Assembly (NCBI GenBank): GCA_002269645.1
Contig: NIVC01003182.1
Coordinates: 1 to 64,000 of the forward strand
Origin: Macrostomum lignano
Lineage: Eukaryota
Length of the DNA: 64,000 nucleotides
Direction: 5' to 3'
Part shown: positions 4,977-27,500 of the stretch, in pieces
How positions within the stretch are numbered: the first letter of the stretch is position 1
Layout of the letters: each line of letters opens with the position of its first letter
Notes under the pieces: model-generated
The model's database searches: none
What the model saw: only the letters and a program-made list of their open reading frames with translations
What the model was told of the DNA's origin: nothing
Made by a program: the position numbers and the translations under genes

Positions 4977-5828
4977 ATGAATTCGATTTCAAAATCAACT
5001 CGCTCTAGTCGAAGCCGATCGACTTTACGCAACAGCCATGGATTTGTCAGCTTAATTGATTCCGATTCAGATGACGAAGTAGATCCTTCGACACTTGAGC
5101 CGCAGCAAAGAATTGTCACGGTGCGTCCGAAGGCAGAAATTATTGATTTAACAGCAGCAACTGCAGTGCCAGAAGGTTCAGACGATTGCATTGTTATTAG
5201 TGACAATGAAAGCGACAATGACCTTGCCAATAATGCTGATGATGGTGAGGAAGCTGCTAGGAGAACAGCAGATTCCCTAGTTTGGATCGATCTGGACGCT
5301 AACGAACTTGAAAGCGACACAGATGACGATGACGACCTCATTGTAGTAGCGGCGACTCCGCCCGCGACTCGACAGATGAAACCGACATTGCCAGCCAAAC
5401 GGAAACTGCTGTATTGTCAGATTTGTAAATCGAACTTTTCGGATCCAATTCGAACTCATCAAGCATCGATTGCTCATCAGCTGGCTCTGATGCCTGATGA
5501 GGCAGCCGCTCCAGCCTCCGGTTCAACAGCTGACAGAAAATTGTGCGTAGCCTCTGGTCCAGCTTATCGGATGATGCTTAAACAGGGCTGGACACCCGGC
5601 AGCGGACTGGGTCGACATGGCCAGGGCCGTTCTCAGCCCATAGCAACCGTTGTCAAGCGGGACCGACTCGGTCTGGGCATGGCCGCTCCGAAAAGGAAGA
5701 AAAAGCAGATTCCGCAAAGCAACAATAGTTCTGCCGCCGAGCCTGCAGGCTCCGGTTGCAAAGCTAATTTTGAGCGAGATTTTCGACGATATATGAACGA
5801 CCCAGATTCCACTGCCTGGTTCCAATAA
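4977..5828 (+). CDS. GPANK1: G-patch domain protein, GPANK1-like C-terminal half (C2H2-like finger + G-patch) with acidic N-terminus
   Basis: Uninterrupted ORF with first ATG at 4977. Motifs: YCQICKSNFSDPIRTHQASIAH finger; G-patch AYRMMLKQGWTPGSGLGRHGQGRSQPIATVVKRDRLGLG; C-terminal FERDFRRYMN resembling the GPANK1 tail. No ankyrin repeats visible, so the symbol is tentative. Confidence 0.8.
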   Translation: MNSISKSTRSSRSRSTLRNSHGFVSLIDSDSDDEVDPSTLEPQQRIVTVRPKAEIIDLTAATAVPEGSDDCIVISDNESDNDLANNADDGEEAARRTADSLVWIDLDANELESDTDDDDDLIVVAATPPATRQMKPTLPAKRKLLYCQICKSNFSDPIRTHQASIAHQLALMPDEAAAPASGSTADRKLCVASGPAYRMMLKQGWTPGSGLGRHGQGRSQPIATVVKRDRLGLGMAAPKRKKKQIPQSNNSSAAEPAGSGCKANFERDFRRYMNDPDSTAWFQ

Positions 5829-6174
5829 TACAATGGTTCAACTACATTAGTCGTTCATTTTTTGCTTGTTATAATGTTATTGTATCTCAATTTTGTGCTA
5901 CAATCCTGTTACGATTGTTTATATGCTGGTTTAATATGTTTCAGTGTAACAAAAATATAAGACAAGAAAATCGTTTTTTATAATTATTAATCAGAATCTT
6001 TTATTAACTTTCTACACAATCTACTTGTTAGTAGTTTTGCATGGATTGTTTATTTAATTTTCTTACTAATCATTTTTCGATACATATCGGTATAGGCTTA
6101 TATTAACTTGTTTTAACAGTAGCGACAGTACAAGTAGGAAAGATTGGGAAACTTCTGTACGGGTCTTCCCGTTG

Positions 6175-7453
6175 CTATGACGACACTCCGCAATCTGCAA
6201 TAACCAGCAGTTTTGTGGGTCTTCCCGACGGGGTGCCCAGGTCTTCGGCTCGTTGCAGCACGTCCCAACCGGATGTTAGCTCGCCAAATACCACGTGACG
6301 ACCGTCCATCCACGGACAGGGGGCCAGCGTGATCAAAAACTGGGAGCTGTTCGTGTCGGGGCCTGAAAGTTGGGGCAGATCGATCGCTTTCGTTTCAGTG
6401 CTTCACGTCTCTTCTCACCCCTGTGTCTCCTATCTCGCTTCTGTGTCTCCCATCTCATCTCTTCCTTGTGTCTCTTATCTCATCACTTCCTTGTGTCTCT
6501 CATCTCATCTTTTCTCTGTGTCTCTTATCTCATCTCTTCCCTGTGTCTCCCATCTCATCTCTTCCCTGTGTCTCCTATCCTCTTCCCTGTGTCTCTTATC
6601 TCATCTCTTCCCTGTGTCTCTCATCTCATTTCTTCCCTGCGTCTCTCATCTAATCTCTTCCCTGTGTGTCTTATCTCATCTTCCCTGTGTCTTCTATCTA
6701 ATCTCTTCCCTGTGTCTCCTATCTCATATCTTCCCACTGTCTCCCATCTCATCTCTTCCCTGTGTCTCTTATCTCATCTTCACCCTGTCTCCCATCTTAT
6801 CTCTTCCCTGCGTCTCATCTTATCTCTTCCCTGCGTCTCTCATCTCATCTCTTCCCTGTGTCTCTCATCTCATCTCTTCCCTGTGTCTCTTATCTTGCCC
6901 CGTGTCTCCTATATTTTCTTACCCCCGTGTCTCCCATCTTATCTCACCCTGTGTCTCCCATCTCATCCCACCCCTATGTCTCGCATCTCACCTCACCTGT
7001 CTCCTCTCTTTTCAACCCCGTCTCCAATCTCATCTCACACCGGTGTCCTCATCTCTTTTCATCCCTGTGACTCCCCTGTCTCTCCCTCTCTTCTCACTCT
7101 TGTGTCTCCAATCTCATCCCACAATGCTCACCGGAGTTGGCCATGCTCAAAAGGCCTCTCCTATCGTGCCTGCCAGTGAGATCCTCATCGGGGAAATACC
7201 TGCCATAGATAGACCAGCCGCCAGTGCCGTTGCCAGACTGGAAGTCGCCAGCTTGTATAGCAAAGCCGGGTATGCACCGGTGGACCCGGCTGCCCCTGTA
7301 GCCCGAACAGCCGTTCTCGTGTCCAACGCAGAGGCTGGCAAAGTTCCGGCAAGTCAGGGGGACTTTCGTAGCGAATAGGCGGAATTCGAGTCGGCCGAGA
7401 GGCACTGAGTTGGCTTCGAGCCTCAGATAGCAGCTGGTTGTGCTGGACTGCAT
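6175..7453 (-). CDS. Cyclophilin-type peptidyl-prolyl isomerase, 2 exons
   Basis: Exon 1 7453-7132 (ATG...[27 protein letters not shown]...LLSMANS-G). GTGAG...TTTCAG intron 7131-6363, phase 1. Exon 2 6362-6175 ([28 protein letters not shown]...ADCGVSS*). AATAAA on the minus strand at 6005-6000. Confidence 0.93.
6405..7115. repeat. CT-rich degenerate minisatellite filling the cyclophilin intron
   Basis: Units of about 20-25 bp like tctcatctcttccctgtgtc repeated throughout the intron. Confidence 0.9.
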
Positions 7454-7609
7454 TCTGTGTGGCTGAGGGTGCAGACAGTAAGTTTTTGTGCCTCAAAGCC
7501 TCAATGCTTCATCTATAGAGCTCCAGGCGTTTGTTAGGCCTTTATAAATGTCTTTTAAAGGCCACACAGTTATTTAGCGTTAAAACACAGTCTAGCTTCA
7601 CGAGACAGC

Positions 7610-10010
7610 GTATTTAGCATGCCACAACACGTCTATTTAGCGCAACAACACAGTCTATTTAGCGCCACAACACAGTCTATTCAGCGCCACAACACAGTCT
7701 ATTTAGCGCAACAACACGTCTATTTAGCGCAACAACACAGTCTATTTAGCGCCACAACACAGTCTATTCAGCGCCACAACACAGTCTATTTAGCATGCCA
7801 CAACACAGTCTATTTAGCGCAACAACACAGTCTATTTAGCGCCACAACACAGTCTATTCAGCGCCACAACACAGTCTATTTAGCGCAACAACACGTCTAT
7901 TTAGCGCAACAACACAGTCTATTTAGCGCCACAACACGTCTATTTAGCGCAACAACACAGTCTATTTAGCGCCACAACACAGTCTATTCAGCGCCACAAC
8001 ACAGTCTATTTAGCGCAACAACACGTCTATTTAGCGCAACAACACAGTCTATTTAGCGCCACAACACGTCTATTTAGCGCAACAACACAGTCTATTTAGC
8101 GCCACAACACAGTCTATTTAGCATGCCACAACACAGTCTATTTAGCGCAACAACACAGTCTATTTAGCGCCACAACACGTCTATTTAGCGCAACAACACA
8201 GTCTATTTAGCGCCACAACACAGTCTATTTAGCGCCACAACACGTCTATTTAGCGCCACAACACGTCTATTTAGCGCCACAACACAGTCTATTTAGCGCC
8301 ACAACACAGTCTATTTAGCGCCACAACACGTCTATTTAGCGCCGCAACACGTCTATTTAGCGCAACAACACAGTCTATTTAGCGCCACAACACGTCTATT
8401 TAGCGCAACAACACAGTCTATTCAGCGCCACAACATAGTCTATTTAGCGCAACAACATAGTCTATTTAGCATGCCACAACACGTCTATTTAGCGCCACAA
8501 CACAGTCTATTTAGCGCCACAACACGTCTATTTAGCGCAACAACACAGTCTATTCAGCGCCACAACACAGTCTATTCAGCGCCACAACATAGTCTATTCA
8601 GCGCCACAACACAGTCTATTTAGCATGCCACAACACGTCTATTTAGCGCCACAACACAGTCTATTTAGCGCCACAACACAGTCTATTTAGCGCCACAACA
8701 CAGTCTATTTAGCGCCACAACACAGTCTATTTAGCGCCACAACACAGTCTATTCAGCGCAACAACACAGTCTATTCAGCGCCACAACATAGTCTATTCAG
8801 CGCCACAACACAGTCTATTCAGCGCCACAACACAGTCTATTCAGCGCCACAACATAGTCTATTTAGCGCAACAACACAGTCTATTTAGCGCCACAACACA
8901 GTCTATTCAGCGCCACAACACAGTCTATTTAGCGCAACAACACGTCTATTTAGCGCAACAACACGTCTATTTAGCGCAACAACACAGTCTATTTAGCGCC
9001 ACAACACAGTCTATTCAGCGCCACAACACAGTCTATTTAGCGCAACAACACAGTCTATTTAGCGCCACAACACAGTCTATTCAGCGCCACAACACGTCTA
9101 TTTAGCGCAACAACACAGTCTATTTAGCGCCACAACACAGTCTATTCAGCGCAACAACACAGTCTATTCAGCGCCACAACATAGTCTATTCAGCGCCACA
9201 ACACAGTCTATTCAGCGCCACAACACAGTCTATTCAGCGCCACAACATAGTCTATTTAGCGCAACAACACAGTCTATTTAGCGCCACAACACAGTCTATT
9301 CAGCGCCACAACACAGTCTATTTAGCGCAACAACACGTCTATTTAGCGCAACAACACGTCTATTTAGCGCAACAACACAGTCTATTTAGCGCCACAACAC
9401 AGTCTATTCAGCGCCACAACACAGTCTATTTAGCGCAACAACACAGTCTATTTAGCGCCACAACACAGTCTATTCAGCGCCACAACACGTCTATTTAGCG
9501 CAACAACACAGTCTATTTAGCGCCACAACACGTCTATTTAGCGCAACAACACAGTCTATTCAGCGCCACAACACGTCTATTTAGCGCAACAACACAGTCT
9601 ATTTAGCGCCACAACACAGTCTATTCAGCGCCACAACACAGTCTATTTAGCGCAACAACACAGTCTATTTAGCGCAACAACACAGTCTATTCAGCGCCAC
9701 AACATAGTCTATTTAGCGCAACAACACAGTCTATTTAGCGCCACAACACAGTCTATTCAGCGCCACAACACAGTCTATTTAGCGCAACAACACAGTCTAT
9801 TTAGCGCAACAACACAGTCTATTTAGCGCAACAACACAGTCTATTCAGCGCCACAACACAGTCTATTTAGCGCAACAACACAGTCTATTTAGCGCCACAA
9901 CACAGTCTATTTAGCGCCACAATACAGTCTATTCAGCGCCACAACACAGTCTATTTAGCGACTCAACACAGTCTATTCAGCATCTCAACACAGTCTATTC
10001 AGCGCCACAA
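7610..10010. repeat. 21-22-bp tandem satellite (aacacagtctatttagcgccac), ~2.4 kb
   Basis: Directly visible tandem array with a few recurring variants (ttcag/tttag, gccac/gcaac, cacgt/cacagt). Confidence 0.97.
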
Positions 10011-10864
10011 TACACTGTTATCGAATTAGCGCCAATGATCAGAACGAAACAATTCGTAAGCAATTCGAATTAATCTTACCTGAATAGATAATAATAAACT
10101 ATATAGTGCAGTTTGTACAGCATCTACTTAAACCTGTACTGGCCTCTTTAAGTCACTATATAGAAACTATTAAGCAAGGTTAATACGCTTGCAGCAAAGT
10201 GAAAGTCGATCCATGAGTGCAGAGAGCTTCAATAGGATTATCGGGAAATGTTTGATGAGGCGTTGACGCTGGCTGTTTGGCTGCAGGAGGAGCAGGGAAA
10301 CACGGGAAAGCTGGGGGTTGGAGCAAACATCGGTTGAGCTTCTCAGTCTGTACAACAGGCTTCCATGGCTTAACTATGTCTATAGTACGGGCTTTTTAGC
10401 TTCGGTTGTCATTGACAACGTATTTTCCATGCTTAAAGTATGCTGGGGCAAGGTAGACAAGAGCGGTGGAGGGAAGTTGCGACGGATTTATCGAATGGAT
10501 TGGGGAACAACTTGCATTACTGAATTGCATTGGGTTGTAGAGTTTTCATTTCAGCCCCGACAGACATTTTTTGAAGCAGAAAGCCAAGCTTGCTGTTTTA
10601 TCCATTGTCTGCGTGTCCTCAGCAATTACAAGGCGAATCGTTGAGGTTTTTGTGTGTTTTACAGCAGGCTGAATTCATTTTTATTGAAGAAAAACTATAC
10701 TTGAAATAGTAAGCATAATGCTTTATAACTGGCTGTAGGGGTTGTAGAGCATTCAGGACTCCGGCCTTTGGGTCACATGCGGCCCACAAAGCCTCTCTGA
10801 GTCTCTACCTGGGCCCCGGGTCCTTTGAAACTTTACAATAGCAACCCAGTCTGATTAAGATTTG

Positions 10865-11190
10865 TATCTTCTCAGCCTTCTCTTCTCTCCTCTCCTCTCT
10901 TCTCTCCTCCTCTCCTCTCTCTCATCCTCTCCTCTCCTTTCCTCTCCTTTCCTCTCCTCTCTCCTCTCTTCTCCGACATCTCAGAAACTCAACCTCATGG
11001 AGCCTTGACATCTCAGCAACTCAACCTCATTGAGCCCTCTCCTCTCCTCTCCTCATCTCTTCTCTCATCTCCTCTCCTCTTTCTTCTTTCCTTTCCTCTC
11101 ATCTCCTCTCATCTCCTCTCTTCTCTCATCTCCTCTCCTCTCTTCTCCTCTACTCTCTTCGCCTCTCCTCTCCTCTCCTCTCCTCTCTCC
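10865..11190. repeat. CT-rich low-complexity tracts (ctcct/ctctt)
   Basis: Two pyrimidine tracts, about 10865-10975 and 11035-11190. Confidence 0.8.
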
Positions 11191-11432
11191 CATCCTCTAG
11201 CCCGCAGTCATGCGCTGTTGTTGACTATACGCTCGTACGCGAGTATACGAAACATTTAATGCCTTCTCAGCCAAGATAAAGGAAGTTGCTGTCACCAAAT
11301 CTTGTACAACTAAACTCTCTTGTCTTATCTGATAAATGACAGGCACTGTATTTAATGTAGGCCAGCACAAGCCAACCTGCTCGCCTGCCTGACTAACGTT
11401 TTCAGGGCTGATTCAGAGCTGAGCTACAAAAA

Positions 11433-13368
11433 ATGTCTTCAAACTACACAGTGAACTGTCTGTTGGACTCTGTAGCCAAAACCTGCGGCGAAGGTCCCTT
11501 CTGGGAGCCGGTCACCAAAACTCTGTACTTTGTTAGCATCGCTGATGGTGAGGTTCACGTGTGGAGTGAGCCGAATAATTACCACAGCACCATCCAGGTG
11601 AGCGGAGCAGAGACCAGCCCAGCGTAAATTGCCTGGCTCTGCGTCGTTGTGGCGGACGATGTCCCCGAAGGCCTTGCACCAGGGTGTCCATACAGCCCTT
11701 CCTGAGAATATCTATTTCTTATTTTCCAGGTGGGTGAACAGCCTGGCAATTTCGTCAGCTTTGTCATCCCGTGCCAGAGTGGCGGCTTCCTAGCCGGAAT
11801 TAACAAGAGCATCGTGCACTGCGACTGGCAGGCTGGAGAGCTGAAACGTCGAGTGCTGCACGAAGTAGATCCTCAGGAGCCTATTAGGTGACTATTAACA
11901 CTTAGTTTAACTCAGAAACGTAAAATGCACATTCTATGTCCATAAACCAATCAATAAGTGACGAAATCGTTAGCGAATATACGCTTACTATTTTAATCAA
12001 ATTAATGCTCCGATAACGTCATCACAGTGCAGAGTCAAAAACTTCAGTATTTGCTGACGAAACTTCCGCAGGTTCAACGACGCCAAATGCGACCCGGCCG
12101 GACGCCTCCTGGCCGGCACGATGAGCCTGGAAAAAGAGGCTGGCTTAGTGATGAAGCCCGGTGCTGGCAGCCTGTTCGGCCTTGACCTGGACGGCTCCAT
12201 CAAGACGCTGGACACAGGATTCTCCCTTAGTAACGGCTTGGGCTGGCATGGCAACACGTTCTACTTCACCGACTCAGTCGCTCGAGTCATCTACGCCTAC
12301 GACTGGGACGCTGAGGCGTTCAGCATCTCGAATCGGCGAGTTGCCATCGACTTCTCGAAGCTGCCCGAGCAGGAGAAGCTCGGCGTGCCGGACGGTCTGG
12401 CTGTGGACGCAGATGGGCGGCTGTGGGTGGCCTGCTTCTTCGGCTCGCGGGTTCTGTGCCTGGACCCGCAGAGTGGCCAGGTGGTCAGCCAGATCCCCAT
12501 GCCTGTGCCCAACGTGACCTCCTGTTGCTTTGGGTCGGACGGAGAGCTGTTTGTGACCACCGCCAACCACTGGGGTGTGCGCGAGGGAGAGCAACCGCCT
12601 CCGCAGGTGGGTTAATTCGTGTATTTGCGGCTTTTGCGTCCCTTCATGTGTGTTATATTCGACGTGTCTTTCTTGAGGTGTCTATCGAGGTGTGTCATTT
12701 TTTAGTTGTGTCTGTGTCTGTGGAGGAGTGTCTTTGTCGATGAGTCTCTTTGTCGAGGAGTGTCTTTGTCGAGAAGTGTCTTTGTCGAGGAGTGTCTTTG
12801 TCGAGGAGTGTCTTTGTCAAGGAGTGTCTATGGAGGTTTTTTTTGTCGAGGAGTGTCTTTGTGGAGGAGTGTCTATGTCACGGTCACGGTGTCTATCAAG
12901 GAGTGTCTTTGTCACGGTGTCTATCAAGGAGTGTCTTTGTCATGGTGTCTATCAAGGAGTATCTTTGTCGCAGTGTCCATCGAGGAATGTCTATATCGAG
13001 ATGTGTGTTTGCCAAGGCTTGTCTTGTCGAGGAATGTCTTTGTCGAGGTGGATCTGTGTCGAGGAGTGTCTTTGTTACGGTGTATCTTTATCTAGGCGTG
13101 TCTTTGTAGAGGAGTGCCATTCTCTAGGTGTGTCTTTGTGTGTAAAATTAGGATTTAAAGGTTGTCTTAAAGGATTAAAAGGGTTAAACGAAATAATCTG
13201 AAGACACTACTAACTGACAAGTTGAGTACTGGCTGGTCGCATGTCAAACGTGAAGCTCCGCCGTCCCATCCGCAGGCCGGCAGCGTCTTCCGCGTCACCG
13301 GACTGGACCGAATTCGCGGAACGCCCAGCGTGATGTACAAAGGCAGCCTGCCCCTCATCAGCGATTAA
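11433..13368 (+). CDS. RGN: Regucalcin/SMP-30/gluconolactonase family, paralog 1 (4 coding exons)
   Basis: Exons 11433-11597, 11730-11887, 12072-12606, 13276-13368; all GT-AG and phase-consistent. Motifs GEGPFW, RFNDAKCDPAGR, SNGLGW, YFTDS, PDGLAVDADGRLWVA, VTSCCFG carry the metal-ligand E/N/N/D set. Confidence 0.92.
12640..13145. repeat. ~16-bp minisatellite (gaggagtgtctttgtc) in the last intron of regucalcin paralog 1
   Basis: Visible degenerate tandem array. Confidence 0.85.
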
Positions 13369-13837
13369 CTGCACCGCTAGAAATGTCCCGCTTAGACTAC
13401 TACTGATGAACATAATAATTACGAGCATAAACAATAAGTAGTGCGTATTTTATGCCAAATACTTGGATTTTTTATAACTTCACAGTCAAGTCATGCAAAT
13501 ATAGCCTAATGCTTTGTGATTTTCTCATTTTTATAGGAAAAACATGTTTATCCTATGTTTAGTGTTTCTGTTTTGAGTTGAATTCAACCAGGAAATTATT
13601 GATCGTTGAAGATCAACTTATTATAGGATTTGGATGCAAGTTCAATATATATATCTGTTGAGAAATGCACAATAAGCGCGTCTTTAACTGTGTTACCTTT
13701 CAAGACAACATTTATTAATACTTTTGCATATTTAGATTATTTGTGTCCTTAATAAATACTTAAAGTACTAGTTTAAACAAGTCCACCAGAATTGTGTCTA
13801 GTCAGGGGATCCTTTTTGACTTTTGACCACGGTTTAT

Positions 13838-14162
13838 GTTAGGGTTTAGTTTAGATTAGGTTTTTATGTTCAGGTTAGGTTTTCCATTTAGGTTAGGGTT
13901 TAGGTTGGGGTTTAGGGTTTAGGTTTATGGTTTAGGTCAGGGTTTAGGGTTAGGGTTTAGGGTTTTGGTTAGAGTTTATAATTTAGGTTGTGGTTTAGGG
14001 TTAGGGTTTAGGGTTTTGGTTAGAGTTTATAATTTAGGTTGTGGTTTAGGGTTAGGGTTTAGGGTTTTGTTTAGAGTTTATAATTTAGGTTGTGGTTTAG
14101 GGTTCAGGTTAGGGTTTATGGTTTATGGTTTAGGTAAGTTAGGGTTTATGGTTTAGGTTTAG
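13838..14162 (+). repeat. Degenerate interstitial telomere-like (TTAGGG/TTTAGG) repeat
   Basis: Runs such as gggtttagggttagggtttagg, with a 53-bp sub-block tandemly repeated about three times (around 13950-14100). Confidence 0.75.
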
Positions 14163-14596
14163 GACTCTCTGTATAAGCTCGTACTAATATCCACTAGCTT
14201 TGCAACAACTGACACAATTTTCCAATAATCTGTAATCAACGACTTGTTTTGATCAGTTCAAGTACTTCGCAGATCAAATTGTTTTTGACGCGCAGTGAAA
14301 ATTTTTTGAGAATTTAACGCATTACTAAAACCATAAAAAAGCAACTTTATGAAATTGTACTGTGGAATAGCAGCTGTTTGTTATAATGATAATTTTTGCA
14401 GGACCGCTGTGGCATCCTGCATATGCTTTCCGCGACATCGTCCCTCAGCCAGTCCGCTCACTTCTGACCTCATGAGTACAAGCTCACCAATATTGTACAG
14501 GCACGCACTCATAAACACGCTCACACGGTGTGTACAGTGGCGCTGATTTTCTAATCTTCAGACATGTACACTCTGTGCTTTGGCTGGGATGTGGGT

Positions 14597-14970
14597 TGTT
14601 TTTTATTTTTATTAGAGGCAAGGGCAGTGTGCACCCTGGCGCACTTCAAGCGACATTGTCGCACAACCGGCGAGAGGCATTACTGCCCATTCCGCCGACT
14701 CCCCTGAGCAGGCACACAAGCGCGCCAATACGAACGCAGTCATACGCACAGGCACACACTCACACAGGAGTGTACAGCGGCCCTGACTTTATTTATCGTT
14801 AGGCATGTCCACTTCACTGTGCCTTGGGGGTTGGCCCTCAAGGCCGTTAACTGCACGAGCAGAGCCAAGCCGAGATTCCAATTTAGCCCCAAATGAATGT
14901 GACTGCACTTGGAATCAAGCCTGGGCCGCTGGCACATCAAAACGCCGCGCCAGACCACTTGGCTACAGCC
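14597..14970 (-). mobile_element. tRNA-derived SINE, copy B
   Basis: Minus-strand A box TAGCCAAGTGG (14965-14955) and B box GGCTTGATTCC (14921-14911). Body is highly similar to 18171-18507. A-rich tail AATAAAAATAAAAAA near 14612-14598. Confidence 0.75.
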
Positions 14971-15395
14971 TAAGGGTATAAGGGTGTCTGAAAGTCAAAA
15001 TAATGAAACTTCAACCAAGCAGCAGGAACCCTGTTTTGCATACCTTTGTGTAAAATAATTTTCGAAGCCAAGCTTTATCTGCATTTTTGTCTCCAGGGTC
15101 CTAAGCATGTCTCAGATTTGGTTTTATCTGCATTTTTGTCTCCAGGGTGCTAAGCATGTCGCAGATTTGGTTTTATCTGCATTTTCGCGTCGCAGTTAAA
15201 GTCGCAGATTTAGCCACCACACCTATGAAAGCTAGTTGAGTCTTAAAGCCTTATCTAATCTGACTGAACAAGCGTTTCTATATGGGACTGTCTTGCAGAC
15301 ATTTTTCTCTGTATAAATTAATTCTTCATTGAATAGCAGTCGTGGTTCCATTAGCCAGCTATAGAGCTGATCAGGGCTTACTAAAGGTCATAAAA

Positions 15396-17294
15396 ATGCC
15401 TTCAAACTACACAGTAAACTGTTTGTTGGACTCTGTAGCCAAAACCGTAGGCGAAGGTCCCTTCTGGGAGCCCGTCACCAAGACTCTGTACTTTGTTAGC
15501 GCCTTTGACGGCGCAGTTCACCTGTGGAGTGAGCCGAATAATTACCACAGCACCATCCAGGTGACCGAAAAGCAGGGCAGCTGTGTCAGCTTCGTCATCC
15601 CCTGTCAGAGTGGTGGTTTCCTAGCTGGCATCAACAACACCATCGTGCACTGCGACTGGCAGGCTGGAGAGCTGAAACGTCGAGTGCTGCGCGAAGTAGA
15701 TCCTCAGGAGCCAATCAGGTGTGAATTAAATTGCGAATGAGCGAAAGCTTCATTGATGATTCACTGATATAACCATTGCTCAGATTCAACGATGCCAAAT
15801 GCGACCCAGCTGGCCGCCTCCTGGCCGGCACGATGAGCTGGGAGAAGGAGGCCGCCGTGTTGATGAAGCCTGAAGCTGGCAGCCTGTTCGGCCTTGACCT
15901 GGACGGCTCCATCAAGAGACTGGACACGGGATTTTCAATCAGCAACGGCTTAGGCTGGCATGGCAACACGTTCTACTTCACCGACTCGCTCGCTCGAGTC
16001 ATCTACGCCTACGACTGGGACGCTGAGGGGTTCAGCATCTCGAATCGGCGAGTTGCTATCGACTTCGCGAAGCTGCCCGAGCAGGAGAAGCTGGGCGTGC
16101 CGGACGGTCTGGCTGTGGATGCAGACGGGCGGCTGTGGGTGGCCTGCTTCTTCGGCTCGCGGGTTCTGTGCCTGGACCCGCAGAGTGGCCAGGTGGTCAG
16201 CCAGATCCCCATGCCTGTGCCCAACGTGACCTCCTGCTGCTTTGGGTCGGACGGAGAGCTGTTTGTGACCACCGCCAACCACTGGGGTGTGCGCGAGGGA
16301 GAGCAGCCGCCTCCGCAGGTGCGTGTTGTGGTTTTTACATGAAATCGATTGTGGGTTTGGGTTTGTTGTGTGAGTGCGTTCGTATGGTTCGGTTAGTTAT
16401 CTGTGTTTTTTGGATATGGGTTGTTTGGTCTTTGTTCAGTTTGTCTCTGTTGAGCTTGTGTTGTGCTTTGTTGAGTTTGTGTCTTTGTTGAGCTTGTGTC
16501 TGATGAGCTTGTGTCTGATGAGCTTGTGTCTGATGGGCTTGTGTCTTTGTTGAGCTTGTGTCTGATGAGCTTGTGTCTGATGAGCTTGTGTCTGATCAGC
16601 TTGTGTCTGATCAGCTTGTGTCTTTGTTGAGCTTGTGTCTGATGAGCTTGTGTCTGATCAGCTTGTGTCTTTGTTGAGCTTGTGTCTGATGAGCTTGTGT
16701 CTGATCAGCTTGTGTCTGATCAGCTTGTGTCTGATCAGCTTGTGTCTTTGTTGAGCTTGTGTCTGATGAGCTTGTGTCTGATCAGCTTGTGTCTGATGAG
16801 CTTGTGTCTTTGTTGAGCTTGTGTCTTTGTTGAGCTTGTGTCTGATGAGCTTGTGTCTGTTGAGCTTGTGTCTTTGTTGAGCTTGTGTCTGTTGAGCTTG
16901 TGTCTTTGTTGAGCTTGTGTCTGTTGAGCTTGTGTCTTTGTTGAGCTTGTGTCTTTGTTGAGCTTGTGTCTTTGTTGAGCTTGTGTCTGATGAGCTTGTG
17001 TCTGATGAGCTTGTGTCTGATGAGCTTGTGTCTGATGAGCTTGTGTCTGATGAGCTTGTGTCTGATGAGCTTGTGTCTGATGAGCTTGTGTCTGATGAGC
17101 TTGTGTCTGTTGAGCTTGTGTCTTTGTGACTCCCCCAGTCCGGGTTTAATATTCTGTGTTCGAAGTGTCGACTGCTCTGCTGCTCCGCCGTCCATCCGCA
17201 GGCCGGCAGCGTCTTCCGCGTGACCGGACTGGACGGAATTCGCGGAACGCCCAGCGTGATGTACAAAGGCAGCCTGCCCCCCATCAGCGATTAA
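15396..17294 (+). CDS. RGN: Regucalcin/SMP-30 family, paralog 2 (3 coding exons)
   Basis: Exons 15396-15718, 15784-16318, 17202-17294; phase-consistent GT-AG; same catalytic motifs as paralog 1. Confidence 0.92.
16440..17126. repeat. 15/18-bp minisatellite (gagcttgtgtctgat / gagcttgtgtctttgtt) in the last intron of paralog 2
   Basis: Visible tandem array with interleaved 15- and 18-bp variants. Confidence 0.95.
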
Positions 17295-17839
17295 CTGCAC
17301 CGCTAGAATTGTCCCTCTTAGACTACTACTGATAAACAATATATTTATAAGTAGGAAGTTTCGCATATTTAACGATTTACCAAATATCTTTATGTATTTA
17401 CAAGGCAGTCCTTATTTGTTATGATTGGATTAAAGCGTATGAAATGTATAAAATAATGAACCATTTTCTACACCACTAAAAATCGCTTGCTAATAAGCAA
17501 AATAACAATTTTAATAATCGAATTAATGCAGTTTTTGAAAAAATCTAATTTTACATGCATTGTTAAATTTCTAGTAGTCTGTAAGTTCCTTATGAAGAAT
17601 TTAAAACTGTTTTTTATAACTTTTAGTAGTTTCTTCCAAGGTCAGCATCAGCTTCAGAGGACCAACAACCCGTGATTTTAAATCACCATATATTGTTTAG
17701 TGTCACGGTTATTCTCTGCTCTAAAGTCTTATGTTAACTAGAAATGCGTTTTTCGAACCTCTAGATTGTTAATCCGCTGCCAAGTTGGTCAAAAATGATA
17801 AATTCGAAACCATTTCAGAGCTCGACATAAGCTATAAAA

Positions 17840-19906
17840 ATGTCTTCAAACTACACAGTGAACTGTCTGTTGGACTCCGTAGCCAAATCCCTAAGCGAAG
17901 GTCCATTCTGGGAGCCGGTCACCAAGACTTTGTACTTCGTCAGCATCTTCGAAGGTGAGGTGCACCTGTGGAATGAGCCGAATAATTATCACAGCACTGT
18001 CAAGGTGAGCGAGCAGCCTGTGAGCTTTGTCATCCCGTGTCAGAGTGGCGGCTTTCTAGCTGGGGCCGGCAAGAGCATCGTGCACTGCGACTGGCAGGCT
18101 GGAGAGCTGAAGCGTCGAGTGCTGCACGAAGTAGATCCCGAACTGTCGAACAGGTGGGTTGGCAGTGTGAGGGCGATGTAGCCTAGTGGTCCAATGCGGC
18201 GCTCTGATGTACCAGCAGCCGAGGCTCGATTCCAAGTGCAGTCACATTCATTTGGGGCTAAATTGGAATCTCGGCTTGGCTCTGCTCGTGCAGTTAACGG
18301 CCTTGAGGGCCAACCCCCAAGGCACAGTGAAGTGTACATGCCTAACGATAAATAAAGTCAGGGCCGCTGTGCACTCCTGCGTGAGTGTGTGCCTGTGCGT
18401 ATGACTGCGTACGTAACCGCGCGCTTGTGTGCCTGCTCAGGGGAGTCGGTGGAATGGGCAGCAATGCCTCTCGCCGGTTTGTGTGACAATGTCGCTAGAA
18501 GTACGCCGTCAAGACCGGTTCTCCACCAAGCGTCAATCCAATAGTTACGTTCGTTAAGCCACTAATTAAAGTTCGACTAACTGCTTTCGAGCAGCACAAA
18601 CGTTTCTCAAAAAGCCCGACGGGTCTTTTATGACGTCATCCTGTTAGCTAGTATAGTAGGTGCCCTGATTAGTTTACGACGACGTTAAAGACGTAGGATG
18701 ACGTCATGATGAGGCATCAAAGAGCTGTGATTAACTGACGAAACTTCCGCAGGTTCAACGACGCCAAATGCGACCCAGCCGGACGCCTCCTGGCCGGCAC
18801 GATGAGCCTGGAGACGAACGCTGGCGCCATTATGAAACCGAACGCTGGCAGCCTGTTCGGCCTTGACTTGTGTGGCTCCATCAAGACGATGGAGACGGGA
18901 GTTTCACTTAGCAACGGCTTGGGCTGGCATGGCAACACGTTCTACTTCACCGACTCACCCGTCCGAACCATCTACGCTTATGACTGGGACGCTGAGGGGT
19001 TCAGCATCTCGAATCGGCGAGTTGCTATCGATTTCTCAAAGCTGCCCGAGCAGGAGAAGCTCGGGTTTCCGGACGGTCTGGCTGTGGATGCAGATGGGCG
19101 GCTGTGGGTGGCCTGCTTTTACGGCTCGCGGGTTCTGTGCCTGGACCCGCAGAGTGGCCAGGTGGTCAGCCAGATCCCCATGCCTGTGCCCAACGTGACG
19201 TCTTGCTGCTTTGGGTCGGACGGAGAGCTGTTTGTGACCACCGCCAACCAATGGGGTGTGCGCGATGGAGAGCAGCCGCCTCCGCAGGTGCGTGTTGTGG
19301 TTTTTACATGAAATCGATTGTGTGACGGGCTCTGGGTGGGTTTGAATGGTTTTCTTGGTTCCCTGTGTTCTTTTTTGATATGTGTGTGTTTGTTGAGTTT
19401 GTGTCTTTGTTGAGCTTGTGTCAATCTTTGTTGAGCTTGTGTCGATCTTTGTTGAGCTTGTGTCTTTGTTGAGCTTGTGTCTTTGTTGAGCTTGTGTCTT
19501 TGTTGAGCTTGTGTCTTTGTTGAGCTTGTGTCTTTGTTGAGCTTGTGTCTTTGTTGAGCTTGTGTCTTTGTTGAGCTTGTGTCTTTGTTGAGCTTGTGTC
19601 TTTGTTGAGCTTGTGTCTTTGTTGAGCTTGTGTCTTTGTTGAGCTTGTGTCTTTGTTGAGCTTGTGTCTTTGTTGAGCTTGTGTCTTTGTTGAGCTTATG
19701 TCGATCTTTGTTCAGCTTGCGTCTTTGTTGAGCTTGTGTCTTTGTTAAGCTTGTCTCTTTGTTGAGCTTGTGTCTTTGTTAAGCTTGTGTGAAGCTTCAC
19801 CGTCCACCCGCAGGCCGGCAGCATTTTTCGCGTGACCGGACTCGACGGAATTCGCGGAACGCCTAGCGTGATGTACAAAGGCAGCCTGCCCCCCATCAGC
19901 GATTAA
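17840..19906 (+). CDS. RGN: Regucalcin/SMP-30 family, paralog 3 (3 coding exons)
   Basis: Exons 17840-18153, 18753-19287, 19814-19906; phase-consistent GT-AG; motifs SEGPFW, RFNDAK, SNGLGW, PDGLAVD. Confidence 0.92.
18171..18507 (+). mobile_element. tRNA-derived SINE, copy A, inside intron 1 of regucalcin paralog 3
   Basis: A box TAGCCTAGTGG (18179-18189) and B box-like GGCTCGATTCC (18223-18233). Body is the reverse-complement match of 14638-14970. Confidence 0.75.
19390..19790. repeat. 18-bp minisatellite (ctttgttgagcttgtgt) in the last intron of paralog 3
   Basis: Homogeneous tandem array of the same family as in paralog 2. Confidence 0.95.
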
Positions 19907-24562: not shown

Positions 24563-27500
24563 ATGGGCAGCTCACTGAGCTTTTGCACTGTTTGTCACCA
24601 ACAGCCAACATCACGGTCTGTAACCATGGTTACTAATAATTACAGCGGTTCCGGAGCAGCTGATGCGGGCGTTGATGCAGCAATTTCAGAAACTGGCTCT
24701 GCAGGTGAGCGTTCATAAGTTTCCGACAATGTACATTGCGTTTCTCGACCTTTCGTATCGGATGTAGCTTTGGTAATAATTCTGATGTAGCTTTGGTAAT
24801 GATTCTGATGTAGTTTTGGTAATGATTCTGATGTAGTTTTGGTATTGATTCTGATGTAGCTTTGGTAATGATTCTGATGTAGTTTTGGTAATGATTCTGA
24901 TGTAGCTTTGGTAATGATTCTGATGTAGTTTTGGTAATGATTCTGATGTAGTTTTGGTAATGATTCTGATGTAGCTTTGGTAATGATTCTGATGTAGCTT
25001 TGGTAATGATTCTGATGTAGCTTTGGTAATGATTCTGATGTAGTTTTGGTAATGATTCTGATGTAGCTTTGGTAATGATTCTGATGTATAGCTTTGGTAA
25101 TAATTCTGATGTAGCTTTGGTAATGATTCTGATGTAGTTTTGGTAATGATTCTGATGTAGTTTTGGTAATGATTCTGATGTAGCTTTGGTAATGATTCTG
25201 ATGTAGCTTTGGTAATGATTCTGATGTAGCTTTGGTAATGATTCTGATGTAGTTTTGGTAATGATTCTGATGTAACTTTGGTAATGATTCTGATGTAGCT
25301 TTGGTAATGATTCTGATGTAGCTTTGGTAATGATTCTGATGTAGCTTGGTAATGATTCTGATGTAGTTTTGGTAATGATTCTGATGTATAGCTTTGGTAA
25401 TGATTCTGATGTAGTTTTGGTAATGATTCTGATGTAGCTTTGGTAATGATTCTGATGTAGTTTTGGTAATGATTCTGATGTAGTTTTGGTAATGATTCTG
25501 ATGTAGCTTCGGTAATGATTCTGATGTAGTTTTGGTAATGATTCTGATGTAGTTTTGGTAATGATTCTGATGTAGTTTTGGTAATGATTCCGATGTAGTT
25601 TTGGTAATAATTCTGATGTATGGCTTTGGTAATGATTCTGATGTAGTTTTGGTAATGATTCTGATGTAGTTTTGGTAATGATTCTGATGTATAGCTTTGG
25701 TAATGATTCTGATGTAGTTTTGGTAATGATTCTGATGTAGCTTTGGTAATGATTCAGATGTAGTTTTGGCAATGATTCTGATGTATAGCTTTGGTAATGA
25801 TTCTGATGTAGTTTTGGTAATGATTCTGATGTAGCTTTGGTAATGATTCTGATGTAGTTTTGGTAATGATTCTGATGTAGCTTCGGTAGTGATTCTGATG
25901 TAGCTTCGGTTGTGATTTTGGTGTAGCTTTGATAATGATTCTGATGTAGTTTTGGTAATGATTCTGATGTAGCTTCGGTAATGATTCTGATGTAGCTTCA
26001 GTAATGATTCTGTTGTAACTTTGGTAATGATTCTGATGTAGCTTTGGTAATGATTCTGATGTAGCTTTGGTAATGATTCTGATGTAGTTTTGGTAATGAT
26101 TCTGATGTAGTTTTGGTAATGATTCCGATGTAGTTTTGGTAATAATTCTGATATATAGCTTTGGTAATGATTCTGATGTAGTTTTGGTAATGATTCTGAT
26201 GTAATTTTGGTAATGATTCTGATGTAGTTTTGGTAATGATTCTGATGTATAGCTTTGGTAATGATTCTGATGTAGTTTTGGTAATGATTCTGATGTAGCT
26301 TTGGTAATGATTCTGATGTAGTTTTGGTAATGATTCTGATGTAGCTTCGGTAATGATTCTGATGTAGCTTCGGTAATGATTCTGATGTATAGCTTTGGTA
26401 ATGAATCTGATGTAGCTTTGGTAATGATTCTGATGTAGCTTTGGTAATGATTCTGATGTATAGCTTTGGTAATGATTCTGATGTAGCTTTGGTAATGATT
26501 CTGATGTAGCTTTGGTAATGATTCTGATGTATAGCTTTGGTAATGAATCTGATGTAGCTTTGGTAATGATTCTGATGTAACTATGGTTGTTATTCTGATG
26601 TAGGTTTGGTAATGATTCTGATGTAGCTTTGGTAATGATTCTGATGTATAGCTTTGGTAATGAATCTGATGTAGCTTTGGTAATGATTCTGATGTAACTT
26701 TGGTTGTTATTCTGATGTAGGTTTGGTAATGATTCTGATGTATAGCTTTGGTAATGATTCTGATGTATAGCTTTGGTAATGAATCTGATGTAGCTTTGGT
26801 AATGATTCTGATGTAGTTTTGGTAATGATTCTGATGTAGTTTTGGTAATGATTCTGATGTAGCTTTGGTAATGATTCTGATGTAGCTTCGGTAATGATTC
26901 TGTTGTAACTTTGGTAATGATTCTGATGTAGCTTCGGTAATGATTCTGTTGTAACTTTGGTAATGATTCTGATGTAGCTTTGGTAATGATTCTGATGTAT
27001 AGCTTTGGTAATGATTCTGATGTAGCTTTGGTAATGAATCTGATGTAGCTTTGGTAATGATTCTGATGTAACTTTGGTTGTTATTCTGATGTAGGTTTGG
27101 TAATGATTCTGATGTAGCTTTGGTAATGATTCTGATGTATAGCTTTGGTAATGAATCTGATGTAGCTTTGGTAATGATTCTGATGTAACTTTGGTTGTTA
27201 TTCTGATGTAGGTTTGGTAATGATTCTGATGTATAGCTTTGGTAATGATTCTGATGTATAGCTTTGGTAATGAATCTGATGTAGCTTTGGTAATGATTCT
27301 GATGTAGTTTTGGTAATGATTCTGATGTATTTTTGGTAATGATTCTGATGTAGTTTTGGTAATGATTCTGATGTAGCTTTGGTAATGATTCTGATGTAGC
27401 TTCGGTAATGATTCTGATGTAGCTTTGATAATGATTTTGATGTAGCTTTGGTAATGATTCTGATGTAACTTTGGTTGTTATTCTGATGTAGGTTTGGTAA

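What the first reader, a model, noticed from the sequence alone, without database searches (positions are those of the whole stretch)
11590..11750. Paralog-specific 132-bp intron flanked by a duplicated splice-site segment: possible intron gain caught in the act
Seen: regucalcin paralog 1 has an intron (11598-11729, in-frame TAA inside) that paralogs 2 and 3 lack. Both junctions read TCCAGGTG (8-bp direct repeat). The intron start gtgagcggagcag and the next exon start gtgggtgaacagcct both resemble the uninterrupted coding sequence of paralog 3, gtgagcgagcagcct. Established: insertion with duplication of an AG|GT proto-splice site (break repair, tandem duplication or introner elements) is a proposed route of intron gain. 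Inference: a recent gain rather than loss in the other two copies.
Basis: partly seen in the sequence, partly recalled or inferred. Interest (0 to 1): 0.75.

Follow-up and report, generated by a model that had tools for sequence, protein, structure and literature searches.

The report
Paralog-specific intron in flatworm regucalcin
One of three tandem regucalcin genes of the flatworm Macrostomum lignano has an extra, genuinely spliced 132-bp intron that was probably gained after the genes duplicated, but it is already fixed, not caught in the act, and its loss from the other two copies cannot be excluded.

Summary
The window is Macrostomum lignano contig NIVC01003182.1 (assembly Mlig_3_7). It carries three tandem regucalcin/SMP30 genes. 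Paralog 1 has a canonical GT-AG intron at 11598-11729. Paralogs 2 and 3 lack it. Both junctions read TCCAG|GTG. Removing the segment restores an intact 316-aa reading frame, and transcript-derived GenBank models splice it exactly.

"Caught in the act" is not supported:
- Two other assembled copies of paralog 1 also carry the intron. It has diverged there as much as other non-coding DNA (96% identity).
- The older intron C, shared by all three paralogs, has an equally long junction repeat (TCCGCAG|G).
- The longer "duplicated segment" scores only one match above 28 control introns.
- The intron interior matches nothing I could search: no second copy, no terminal inverted repeats, no Rfam or protein hit.

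Five other bilaterians share an ancient phase-1 intron exactly 4 nt downstream of this phase-0 site. Relationships among the paralogs are mosaic, so counting events gives little help.

My estimates:
- Gain at an AG|GT site after the triplication: about 0.55.
- Older intron lost from paralogs 2 and 3 through junction microhomology: about 0.3.
- Ancient intron that slid 4 nt: about 0.08.

The parts
11433..11597 (+). Regucalcin paralog 1, coding exon 1 (M1-Q55); ends ...ACCATCCAG
   Evidence: Translation and tblastn. RNA-derived model P0002 has the junction STIQ|VGEQ.
11598..11729 (+). Intron A: 132 nt, GT-AG, phase 0, present only in paralog 1. The first 100 nt are 63% GC; the last 32 nt are 31% GC and pyrimidine-rich, ending in CAG.
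   Evidence: In-frame TAA at 11625 and TGA at 11703. The L006/L007 copies carry it as a 133-nt intron spliced in model P0124.
11593..11600 (+). Left copy of the 8-bp junction direct repeat TCCAG|GTG (5' splice junction)
11725..11732 (+). Right copy of the 8-bp junction direct repeat TCCAG|GTG (3' splice junction)
11730..11887 (+). Paralog 1 coding exon 2 (V56 to the first 2 nt of R108)
11888..12071 (+). Intron B (phase 2), shared by all three paralogs. The position is absent from five outgroup bilaterians.
12072..12606 (+). Paralog 1 coding exon 3
12607..13275 (+). Intron C (phase 0), shared by all three paralogs and flanked by its own 8-bp junction repeat TCCGCAG|G. Contains a minisatellite.
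13276..13368 (+). Paralog 1 coding exon 4, including the stop codon
15396..15718 (+). Paralog 2 exon 1, uninterrupted across the site homologous to intron A (15560|15561, CAG GTG)
   Evidence: Identical to annotated protein P0122.
17840..18153 (+). Paralog 3 exon 1, uninterrupted across the homologous site (18004|18005, AAG GTG)
   Evidence: Identical to annotated protein P0121.

Best explanation
Segment 11598-11729 is an ordinary U2-type GT-AG spliceosomal intron in the first of three tandem regucalcin (SMP30/gluconolactonase-like) genes of Macrostomum lignano. It must be spliced out to give the 316-aa protein, and it is.

Shown:
- The gene is intact.
- The intron is spliced in transcript-derived gene models on three contigs.
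- It is absent from paralogs 2 and 3.
- It is present in all assembled copies of paralog 1.

Inferred, as the most likely history:
- About 124-132 bp of unrelated, GC-rich DNA was inserted at a CAG|GTG proto-splice site of paralog 1. This happened after the triplication but before the assembled haplotype or homeologue copies diverged.
- The insertion was probably filler DNA captured during double-strand-break repair.
- A short target duplication (TCCAGGTG) accompanied the insertion, so an AG|GT junction existed at both ends and the insert could be spliced out at once.
- The donor of the inserted DNA is unknown.
For: Intron reality and splicing:
- the ORF is restored by removing the segment and stops if it is read through.
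- proteins P0002 and P0124 carry the junction STIQ|VGEQ. P0124 maps exactly onto L006/L007 with a 133-nt GT-AG intron.
- (PMC5730564): the GenBank annotation of Mlig_3_7 derives from RNA-seq and transcript assemblies.

Gain rather than loss:
- The intron occurs only in paralog 1.
- In the 165 nt upstream of the site, informative positions group paralogs 1+2 by 6:1:0. There, loss would need two events.
- Paralogs 2 and 3 differ at many positions around the site, so there is no recent conversion tract between them.
- The position (phase 0) is not the ancient bilaterian one (phase 1, 4 nt downstream).
- This lineage has clearly acquired introns. Positions B and C are absent from five outgroups, and all three Macrostomum introns sit at AG|G(T). 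Two of the only five AG|GT sites in the CDS are occupied.
- The intron body has exon-like 63% GC, against 35-45% for introns B and C.
- An 8-bp exact junction repeat is present.
Against: - No closer outgroup gene structure was available. The outgroup P0001 is known only as a transcript.
- Paralog relationships are mosaic: informative sites split 14:14:9. The neutral 5' flank of intron C groups paralogs 2+3 (76% versus 45-48%). One loss in a 2+3 ancestor is therefore possible.
- An ancient conserved intron lies only 4 nt away.
- The junction repeat is no longer than that of the older intron C. The extended duplication is barely above controls.
- Microhomology also predicts loss (PMC3698931).
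- No donor sequence or second copy was found.
Confidence: 0.55

Rival explanations
1. The intron predates the triplication, as a Macrostomum-lineage intron like B and C. It was then precisely deleted from paralogs 2 and 3, either once in a common ancestor or twice. The likely route is microhomology-mediated end joining between the TCCAGGTG repeats, or conversion by a spliced cDNA.
For: - An 8-bp junction microhomology is what favours precise intron loss (PMC3698931, PMC3020277).
- The intron is short.
- The 5' flank and minisatellite of intron C group paralogs 2+3 against paralog 1, which allows a single loss.
- This lineage lost at least three ancestral introns from this gene.
- All three intron sites read AG|G(T) in the outgroup mRNA P0001. 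That is compatible with an intron being present there.
Against: - Around the site itself, paralogs 2 and 3 are the most divergent pair, and no informative site groups them in the first 165 nt.
- Two independent exact losses of the 5'-most intron are needed if paralogs 1+2 are sisters there.
- The exon-like GC content of the intron body suggests a young intron.
Confidence: 0.3
2. Intron A is the ancient bilaterian first intron (phase 1, alignment position 64.1). It was retained only in paralog 1 after sliding 4 nt upstream, and was lost from paralogs 2 and 3.
For: - Lingula, Owenia, Lineus, Saccostrea and Diadema all have a phase-1 intron 37 nt after the conserved aromatic residue. Paralog 1 has its intron 33 nt after that residue.
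- A 3-4-residue length difference sits immediately downstream, as would be expected if the splice sites had shifted.
Against: - The phase differs (0 versus 1). A 4-nt shift of both splice sites that still re-encodes Val-Gly needs several coordinated changes.
- The other three ancient introns are all gone from Macrostomum.
- Two of the five AG|GT sites in the CDS lie within 5 nt of ancestral intron sites, so the closeness is expected under gain at a proto-splice site.
- This history also needs losses in paralogs 2 and 3.
Confidence: 0.08
3. The insert is a copy of an introner-like or MITE-like mobile element that carries or creates its own splice sites through target-site duplication.
For: - The 8-bp direct repeat is a typical target-site-duplication length.
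- The AT-rich, pyrimidine-rich 3' tail looks like a ready-made acceptor region.
Against: - No other copy was found in the 64-kb window or in two 22-26-kb related loci.
- There are no terminal inverted repeats.
- There is no exceptional structure: fold z = -1.2.
- No paper in the library links Macrostomum with introners.
Confidence: 0.05
4. The segment is not a functional intron. Paralog 1 would then be a pseudogene disrupted by an insertion, or the segment would be an assembly artefact.
For: - The GenBank model P0002 for the window copy is flagged partial. It leaves the genomic reading frame after about residue 167.
Against: - The genomic ORF is intact across all four exons.
- The same intron is found in three independently assembled contigs.
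- Transcript-derived models splice it.
- Exons are more conserved than introns between the copies.
Confidence: 0.02

Closest known systems
Recent intron gains flanked by short direct repeats and attributed to double-strand-break repair (Daphnia populations, Li et al. 2009 Science, cited from my own knowledge; model reviewed in PMC3020277)
   Same: A short new intron at an AG|GT site. It is flanked by a short exact direct repeat (8 bp), its interior is unrelated to the host gene, and it is absent from close paralogous sequences.
   Different: - There is no presence/absence polymorphism here: all three assembled copies carry it.
- The gain is not polarised by a close outgroup.
- The repeat overlaps the splice consensus and is matched in length by an older intron in the same gene.
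Microhomology-mediated intron loss (van Schendel and Tijsterman 2013, PMC3698931)
   Same: Exon-intron junctions share microhomology, which is the feature found to raise the chance of precise genomic deletion. Short intron.
   Different: The observed state is the intron-bearing copy. Loss in paralogs 2 and 3 is only inferred and needs one or two events. No deletion footprint can be seen.
Introner elements / introner-like elements (Micromonas, Aureococcus, fungi; e.g. PMC4457414)
   Same: Insertion model in which a target-site duplication supplies one splice junction. Similar size range.
   Different: No multicopy family was detected in the DNA available. There are no terminal inverted repeats and no conserved structure.
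Tandem duplication of an AGGT-containing exon segment (Rogers model of intron gain)
   Same: AG|GT at both junctions. The first ~13 nt of the intron resemble the start of the next exon.
   Different: The model predicts that the whole intron is a copy of adjacent exon sequence. Here the interior has no significant similarity to the flanking exons on either strand.
Conserved bilaterian regucalcin intron 1 (phase 1)
   Same: Lies within 4 nt of the same place in the protein alignment.
   Different: Different phase and nucleotide position. The remaining ancient introns are absent from the Macrostomum genes.

Membership tests
U2-type GT-AG spliceosomal intron | GT at the 5' end, AG at the 3' end, pyrimidine-rich tract before the acceptor | tested here: met
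   gtgagc...tctatttcttattttccag
U2-type GT-AG spliceosomal intron | Removal restores a reading frame colinear with homologues; retention truncates the protein | tested here: met
   316-aa protein colinear with paralogs 2 and 3 and with P0001. Read-through hits TAA at codon 10.
U2-type GT-AG spliceosomal intron | Spliced in transcripts | tested here: met
   Transcript-derived GenBank models P0002 and P0124 carry the spliced junction. P0124 maps exactly with a 133-nt intron on L006/L007. Annotation method: PMC5730564. Raw RNA-seq reads were not inspected.
Regucalcin / SMP30 (Pfam PF08450 SGL) | SGL domain; full-length similarity to annotated regucalcins | tested here: met
   PF08450 is precomputed on the window's gene models. 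35-47% identity to animal regucalcins over more than 90% of the length.
Introner / introner-like element | Many near-identical copies forming introns in unrelated genes | tested here: inconclusive
   No second copy in the 64-kb window or in L006/L007. The whole genome could not be searched with these tools.
Introner / introner-like element | Terminal inverted repeats inside a target-site duplication (DNA-transposon type) | tested here: not met
   An 8-bp direct repeat is present, but no terminal inverted repeats. The only inverted repeat is an internal 13-mer paired with exon 2, and the intron's reverse-complement similarity to exon 2 is at chance level (p = 0.25).
Intron by tandem exon-segment duplication | Intron sequence homologous to adjacent exon sequence along its length | tested here: not met
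   Smith-Waterman against shuffled sequences: p = 0.9-0.99 on the + strand against exons 1 and 2. No hit to paralog exons or at protein level.
Ancient conserved bilaterian regucalcin intron 1 | Same position and phase in the coding alignment | tested here: not met
   Outgroups: column 64, phase 1. Paralog 1: column 63, phase 0, a 4-nt offset.
Recent (segregating) DSB-repair intron gain | Presence/absence polymorphism among alleles or very close copies | tested here: not met
   All three assembled paralog 1 copies have it, at 96.2% identity. Population data were not available.
Recent (segregating) DSB-repair intron gain | Short direct repeats flanking the insert | tested here: met
   TCCAGGTG x 2. 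Not specific: intron C has 8 bp too.

The most novel reading that the evidence does not exclude
Macrostomum regucalcin has replaced all four ancient bilaterian phase-1 introns with three lineage-specific introns at AG|G(T) sites. Two of these are flanked by exact 8-bp junction repeats. Intron A would be the youngest product of an ongoing intron-gain process in M. lignano, based on break repair or target duplication. If this holds genome-wide, this hidden-polyploid, paralog-rich flatworm would be a metazoan system in which recent intron gains can be dated between paralogs and their donor sequences traced.
Probability: 0.2. Interest if true: 0.65.

Novelty: new member of a known kind. Interest (0 to 1): 0.33.

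Why it matters
Well-polarised, recent spliceosomal intron gains in animals are rare, so each clean case informs the debate on how introns arise. This case is not yet clean. It does come with a useful framework: three tandem paralogs, several assembled copies, transcript evidence, and an outgroup map showing complete turnover of intron positions in this gene. Sister-species genomes that already exist can resolve it. If their orthologues lack an intron at this position, that would support a gain dated to after the triplication at a defined proto-splice site, only 4 nt from where an ancient intron once stood. If they carry it, the case illustrates precise intron loss helped by junction microhomology in tandem paralogs.

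Tried and rejected
- Other copies of the 132 bp: blastn-short in the window found only chance matches of 12 nt or less.
- Tandem or inverted duplication of flanking exon: Smith-Waterman with shuffles gave nothing significant. The best value was p = 0.012, uncorrected over 14 tests, for the minus strand against exon 1. The intron's reverse-complement similarity to exon 2, whose best alignment is the AAATTGCCTGGC/GCCTGGCAATTT inverted match, is at chance level (p = 0.25).
- RNA gene in the intron: no Rfam hit at E <= 1. Fold z-score is -1.2.
- Coding origin of the intron body: six-frame comparison to regucalcin, codon-usage scoring and Pfam gave nothing apart from one sub-threshold Pfam hit (Defensin_2, E = 0.029, below the curated cut-off), which I read as chance. 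An exhaustive HMMER search of the best frame returned only two repeat-inflated spurious hits, P0266 and P0267.
- Closer outgroup gene structures: two further protein searches found no genomic fragments from other Macrostomum species and no annotated flatworm homologue. Spliced window proteins could not be looked up directly. One fish protein was not on record, and another fish locus was truncated and could not be solved.
- Species of origin of P0001: the SRA run number appears in no paper in the library.
- Literature: no paper in the library links Macrostomum with intron gain or introners.
- Clean paralog tree: rejected. Informative sites and non-coding flanks give conflicting groupings, which points to gene conversion or a near-trichotomy.

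Full report
**Identity of the locus.** The window is eukaryotic. A full-length protein search with paralog 1 found Macrostomum lignano as the closest named source (P0002, BOX15_Mlig017631g2) and animal regucalcins at 35-47% identity, all with Pfam PF08450. The contig that encodes P0002 is NIVC01003182.1 of assembly GCA_002269645.1 (Mlig_3_7). Its positions 1418-22517 are 100% identical to window 1418-22517, so the window is the first 64 kb of that contig.

**The observation.** tblastn with paralog 1 finds three tandem regucalcin genes on the + strand. Exon maps that reproduce intact proteins:

| Gene | Exons | Protein |
|---|---|---|
| Paralog 1 | 11433-11597, 11730-11887, 12072-12606, 13276-13368 | 316 aa |
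| Paralog 2 | 15396-15718, 15784-16318, 17202-17294 | 316 aa, identical to GenBank PAA52789 |
| Paralog 3 | 17840-18153, 18753-19287, 19814-19906 | 313 aa, identical to PAA52790 |

- The DNA alignment shows a 132-nt block, 11598-11729, present only in paralog 1.
- The block begins GT and ends with a pyrimidine-rich tract plus CAG.
- Read-through meets TAA at 11625 and TGA at 11703.
- TCCAGGTG is present at both junctions.

**Is it spliced?** The GenBank annotation of Mlig_3_7 was produced from a genome-guided transcriptome built from RNA-seq, StringTie/TACO and de novo transcripts (PMC5730564).
- The model for the window copy (P0002) and the model for two other contigs (P0124) both read ...HSTIQ|VGEQPGNF..., which is the spliced form.
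- P0124 maps exactly, codon for codon, onto L006 (NIVC01001538.1) and L007 (NIVC01002209.1). The intron there is 133 nt, GT-AG, at the same place.
- At 133 nt, retention in those copies would also shift the frame.

Paralog 1 is therefore an expressed, intact gene and the segment is a working intron. I did not see raw reads.

**Not "in the act".** L006 and L007 carry the same three-gene cluster.
- Their paralog 1 copies carry intron A with 4 substitutions and 1 indel relative to the window (96.2% identity).
- That matches intron B (97.3%), the upstream 200 nt (97.0%) and the 3' part of intron C (95.9%). Exons 2 and 3 are 99.3% identical.
- The intron is thus at least as old as the split between these assembled haplotype or homeologue copies, and it evolves like neutral DNA.
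- Paralogs 2 and 3 on those contigs also lack it.

**Where does the 132 bp come from?** I found no source.
- There is no second copy in the window.
- There is no significant similarity, on either strand, to the flanking exons, paralog exons, intron B or the upstream region. This rules out the simple tandem exon-duplication model.
- There are no terminal inverted repeats, no Rfam family and no unusual folding.
- There is no protein-level similarity to regucalcin and no significant Pfam hit (one sub-threshold Defensin_2 match, E = 0.029). An exhaustive search of one frame gave only repeat-inflated spurious hits.
- One compositional hint remains. The first 100 nt are 63% GC, like exon 3 and unlike introns B (35%) and C (45%). 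The last 32 nt are 31% GC and pyrimidine-rich. That fits a young insert of exon-like DNA, but it is weak evidence.

**How special is the junction repeat?** I measured exact junction repeats for 29 introns whose boundaries I solved exactly.

| Intron | Junction repeat |
|---|---|
| A (paralog 1 only) | TCCAG\|GTG, 8 nt |
| C (all three paralogs, so older) | TCCGCAG\|G, 8 nt in paralogs 1 and 2; 7 nt in paralog 3 |
| B | 4-5 nt |
| 22 outgroup introns | 2-6 nt |

- In a 20-nt junction-to-junction alignment, intron A scores 12, tied with intron C of paralog 1. The next best scores are 11.
- Its intron-start versus next-exon-start score is 8/13, against at most 7/13 elsewhere.
- Intron A is therefore at the top of the distribution but is not an outlier.
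- The 12/13 match of the intron start to paralog 3 GTGAGCGAGCAG partly reflects the 5' splice consensus (GTGAG).
- It also depends on choosing paralog 3, whose AGC codon is probably derived. Paralog 1 (GGT) and the outgroup transcript P0001 (GGC) both encode Gly there.
- Junction microhomology does not polarise the event either. It is expected after gain by break repair, and it also raises the probability of precise intron loss (PMC3698931, PMC3020277).

**Outgroup intron positions.** I solved exact exon maps for regucalcin genes of Lingula anatina, Owenia fusiformis, Lineus longissimus, Saccostrea echinata and the sea urchin Diadema antillarum.
- All five share four phase-1 introns at alignment positions 64.1, 137.1, 212.1 and 267.1. 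These introns date at least to the bilaterian ancestor.
- The Macrostomum genes have none of 137.1, 212.1 or 267.1. They have B at 122.2 and C at 315.0, which no outgroup has.
- Intron A lies at 63.0, exactly 4 nt upstream of the ancient 64.1 site and in a different phase.
- Measured from the conserved aromatic residue with no intervening gaps, the intron is 33 nt downstream in paralog 1 and 37 nt downstream in Lingula, Lineus, Saccostrea and Diadema. Owenia has a one-residue insertion there.

It is not met, but only narrowly.

Two considerations reduce the weight of this closeness:
- A 4-nt slide of both splice sites that still encodes Val-Gly needs several coordinated changes.
- The paralog 1 CDS has only five AG|GT sites, after nt 61, 120, 165, 323 and 732. 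Sites 165 and 323 hold introns A and B. Two of the five (165 and 732) lie within 5 nt of ancestral intron sites (169 and 727). A new intron restricted to proto-splice sites would therefore often land beside an old site.

**Polarity among the paralogs.** P0001 is a 311-aa protein found only on ~1.0-1.2-kb contigs of the Logan assemblies of runs SRR28338163-7. Their length, flanking untranslated sequence and uninterrupted coding region suggest they are transcripts.
- It is an outgroup to all three paralogs. Third-position differences are 0.40-0.45, against 0.15-0.20 among the paralogs. Its gene structure is unknown.
- Among the paralogs the signal is mosaic. Parsimony-informative sites split 14 (1+2): 14 (1+3): 9 (2+3).
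- In the 165 nt upstream of the intron site the split is 6:1:0 for 1+2.
- The 3' half of the gene is nearly identical between paralogs 1 and 2, which suggests gene conversion.
- The 5' flank and minisatellite of intron C group paralogs 2+3: 76% against 45-48%.
- Intron B's acceptor region groups paralogs 1+3.

"One gain versus two losses" is therefore not secure, because one loss on a short 2+3 branch is conceivable. Against that, paralogs 2 and 3 are the most divergent pair around the site itself and share no informative change there. This argues against a shared loss or a recent conversion between them at this spot.

**Verdict on mechanism.**
- Shown: a canonical, spliced intron specific to paralog 1, fixed in all assembled copies.
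- Gain after the triplication at the CAG|GTG proto-splice site, confidence about 0.55. This is the most likely history. The insert is unrelated GC-rich DNA with a short target duplication, as expected from double-strand-break repair.
- Older Macrostomum intron precisely lost from paralogs 2 and 3 via its junction microhomology, about 0.3. This is the main rival.
- Retention of the ancient intron with a 4-nt slide, about 0.08.
- An introner-type element, about 0.05. It remains untested at genome scale.
- A pseudogene or assembly artefact, about 0.02.

**Novelty and interest.** Presence/absence of an intron among paralogs, and the gain and loss mechanisms considered here, are known kinds of event. 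I found no publication on this case, so I class it as a new member of a known kind.

The more interesting by-product is the complete turnover of intron positions in Macrostomum regucalcin relative to a map conserved across bilaterians. All three lineage-specific introns sit at AG|G(T) sites, and two have 8-bp junction repeats. That pattern hints at an active gain process in this lineage, but with n = 3 it is only a lead.

The existing M. cliftonense and M. hystrix assemblies (PMC10468722) can settle gain versus loss, and a whole-genome blastn of the 132 bp can address where the insert came from.

Noticed in passing
window 11433-19906 compared with L008, L009, L010, L012, L013: Complete turnover of intron positions. 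Five bilaterians share four phase-1 introns (alignment positions 64.1, 137.1, 212.1, 267.1). The Macrostomum paralogs have none of the last three. They carry lineage-specific introns at 122.2 and 315.0, plus 63.0 in paralog 1.
   Followed up: yes
window 12599-12607 and 13268-13276; also 16311-16319/17194-17202 and 19281-19288/19807-19814: Intron C, shared by all three paralogs, is flanked by its own exact junction repeat TCCGCAG|G (8 nt in paralogs 1 and 2, 7 nt in paralog 3). Intron B's acceptor in paralogs 1 and 3 also ends TTCCGCAG. This is either a species-specific acceptor motif or a recurring signature of how these introns arose.
   Followed up: partly
window 12690-13110, 16472-17123, 19383-19790: Each paralog's intron C holds a related but fast-diverging minisatellite with 15-17-nt units containing TGTGTCT. 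The paralog 2 and 3 arrays align at about 85%. The paralog 1 array does not align with either.
   Followed up: partly
window 11433-19906: Relationships among the three paralogs are mosaic. The 3' half of exon 3 and exon 4 are nearly identical in paralogs 1 and 2. Intron C groups 2+3. Intron B's acceptor groups 1+3. This indicates gene conversion among the tandem copies.
   Followed up: partly
window 14638-14967 and 18177-18507 (inverted): A ~330-bp dispersed repeat, 92.7% identical between the two copies. One copy lies in the paralog 1-paralog 2 spacer. The other is inverted inside intron B of paralog 3 and accounts for most of that intron's extra length. Possibly SINE-like.
   Followed up: no
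window ~13830-14165: Degenerate interstitial array of telomere-like GGTTTA/GGGTTA (TTAGGG-type) repeats just downstream of paralog 1.
   Followed up: no
window 7611-10014 and 24761-33387: Two large satellite arrays: a 22-bp unit x ~110 copies, and a 23-bp unit x ~370 copies (8.6 kb) with strong GC skew. Several further minisatellites lie at 6.4-7.1, 21.7, 35.4, 36.4-37.2, 40.8-41.7 and 42.3-42.8 kb.
   Followed up: no
window 11418-12517 (GenBank model P0002): The annotated CDS for the window's paralog 1 is flagged partial. It leaves the genomic reading frame after ...SIKTLDTG (about residue 167) and could not be mapped with canonical introns. The genomic ORF itself is intact, so this is probably a transcript-mapping or annotation artefact.
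   Followed up: partly
L006 13974-14295: On contig NIVC01001538.1, exon 1 of paralog 2 has a 2-nt length difference that breaks the frame. This is a pseudogenised copy or an indel error of the long-read assembly. The GenBank model there spans 5.6 kb, across the paralog 1 and paralog 2 genes.
   Followed up: no
window 5007-19906: UniProt models from the older ML2 assembly fuse the three paralogs, and in one case the upstream G-patch gene, into single proteins of 908-1142 aa. GenBank locus names place paralogs 2 and 3 in one transcriptional unit (Mlig000748 g2/g3). This fits the polycistronic, SL-trans-spliced units described for this species.
   Followed up: no
window 10860-11200: A long CT-rich (CTCCT/CTCTC) microsatellite block lies immediately upstream of the paralog 1 promoter region.
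   Followed up: no
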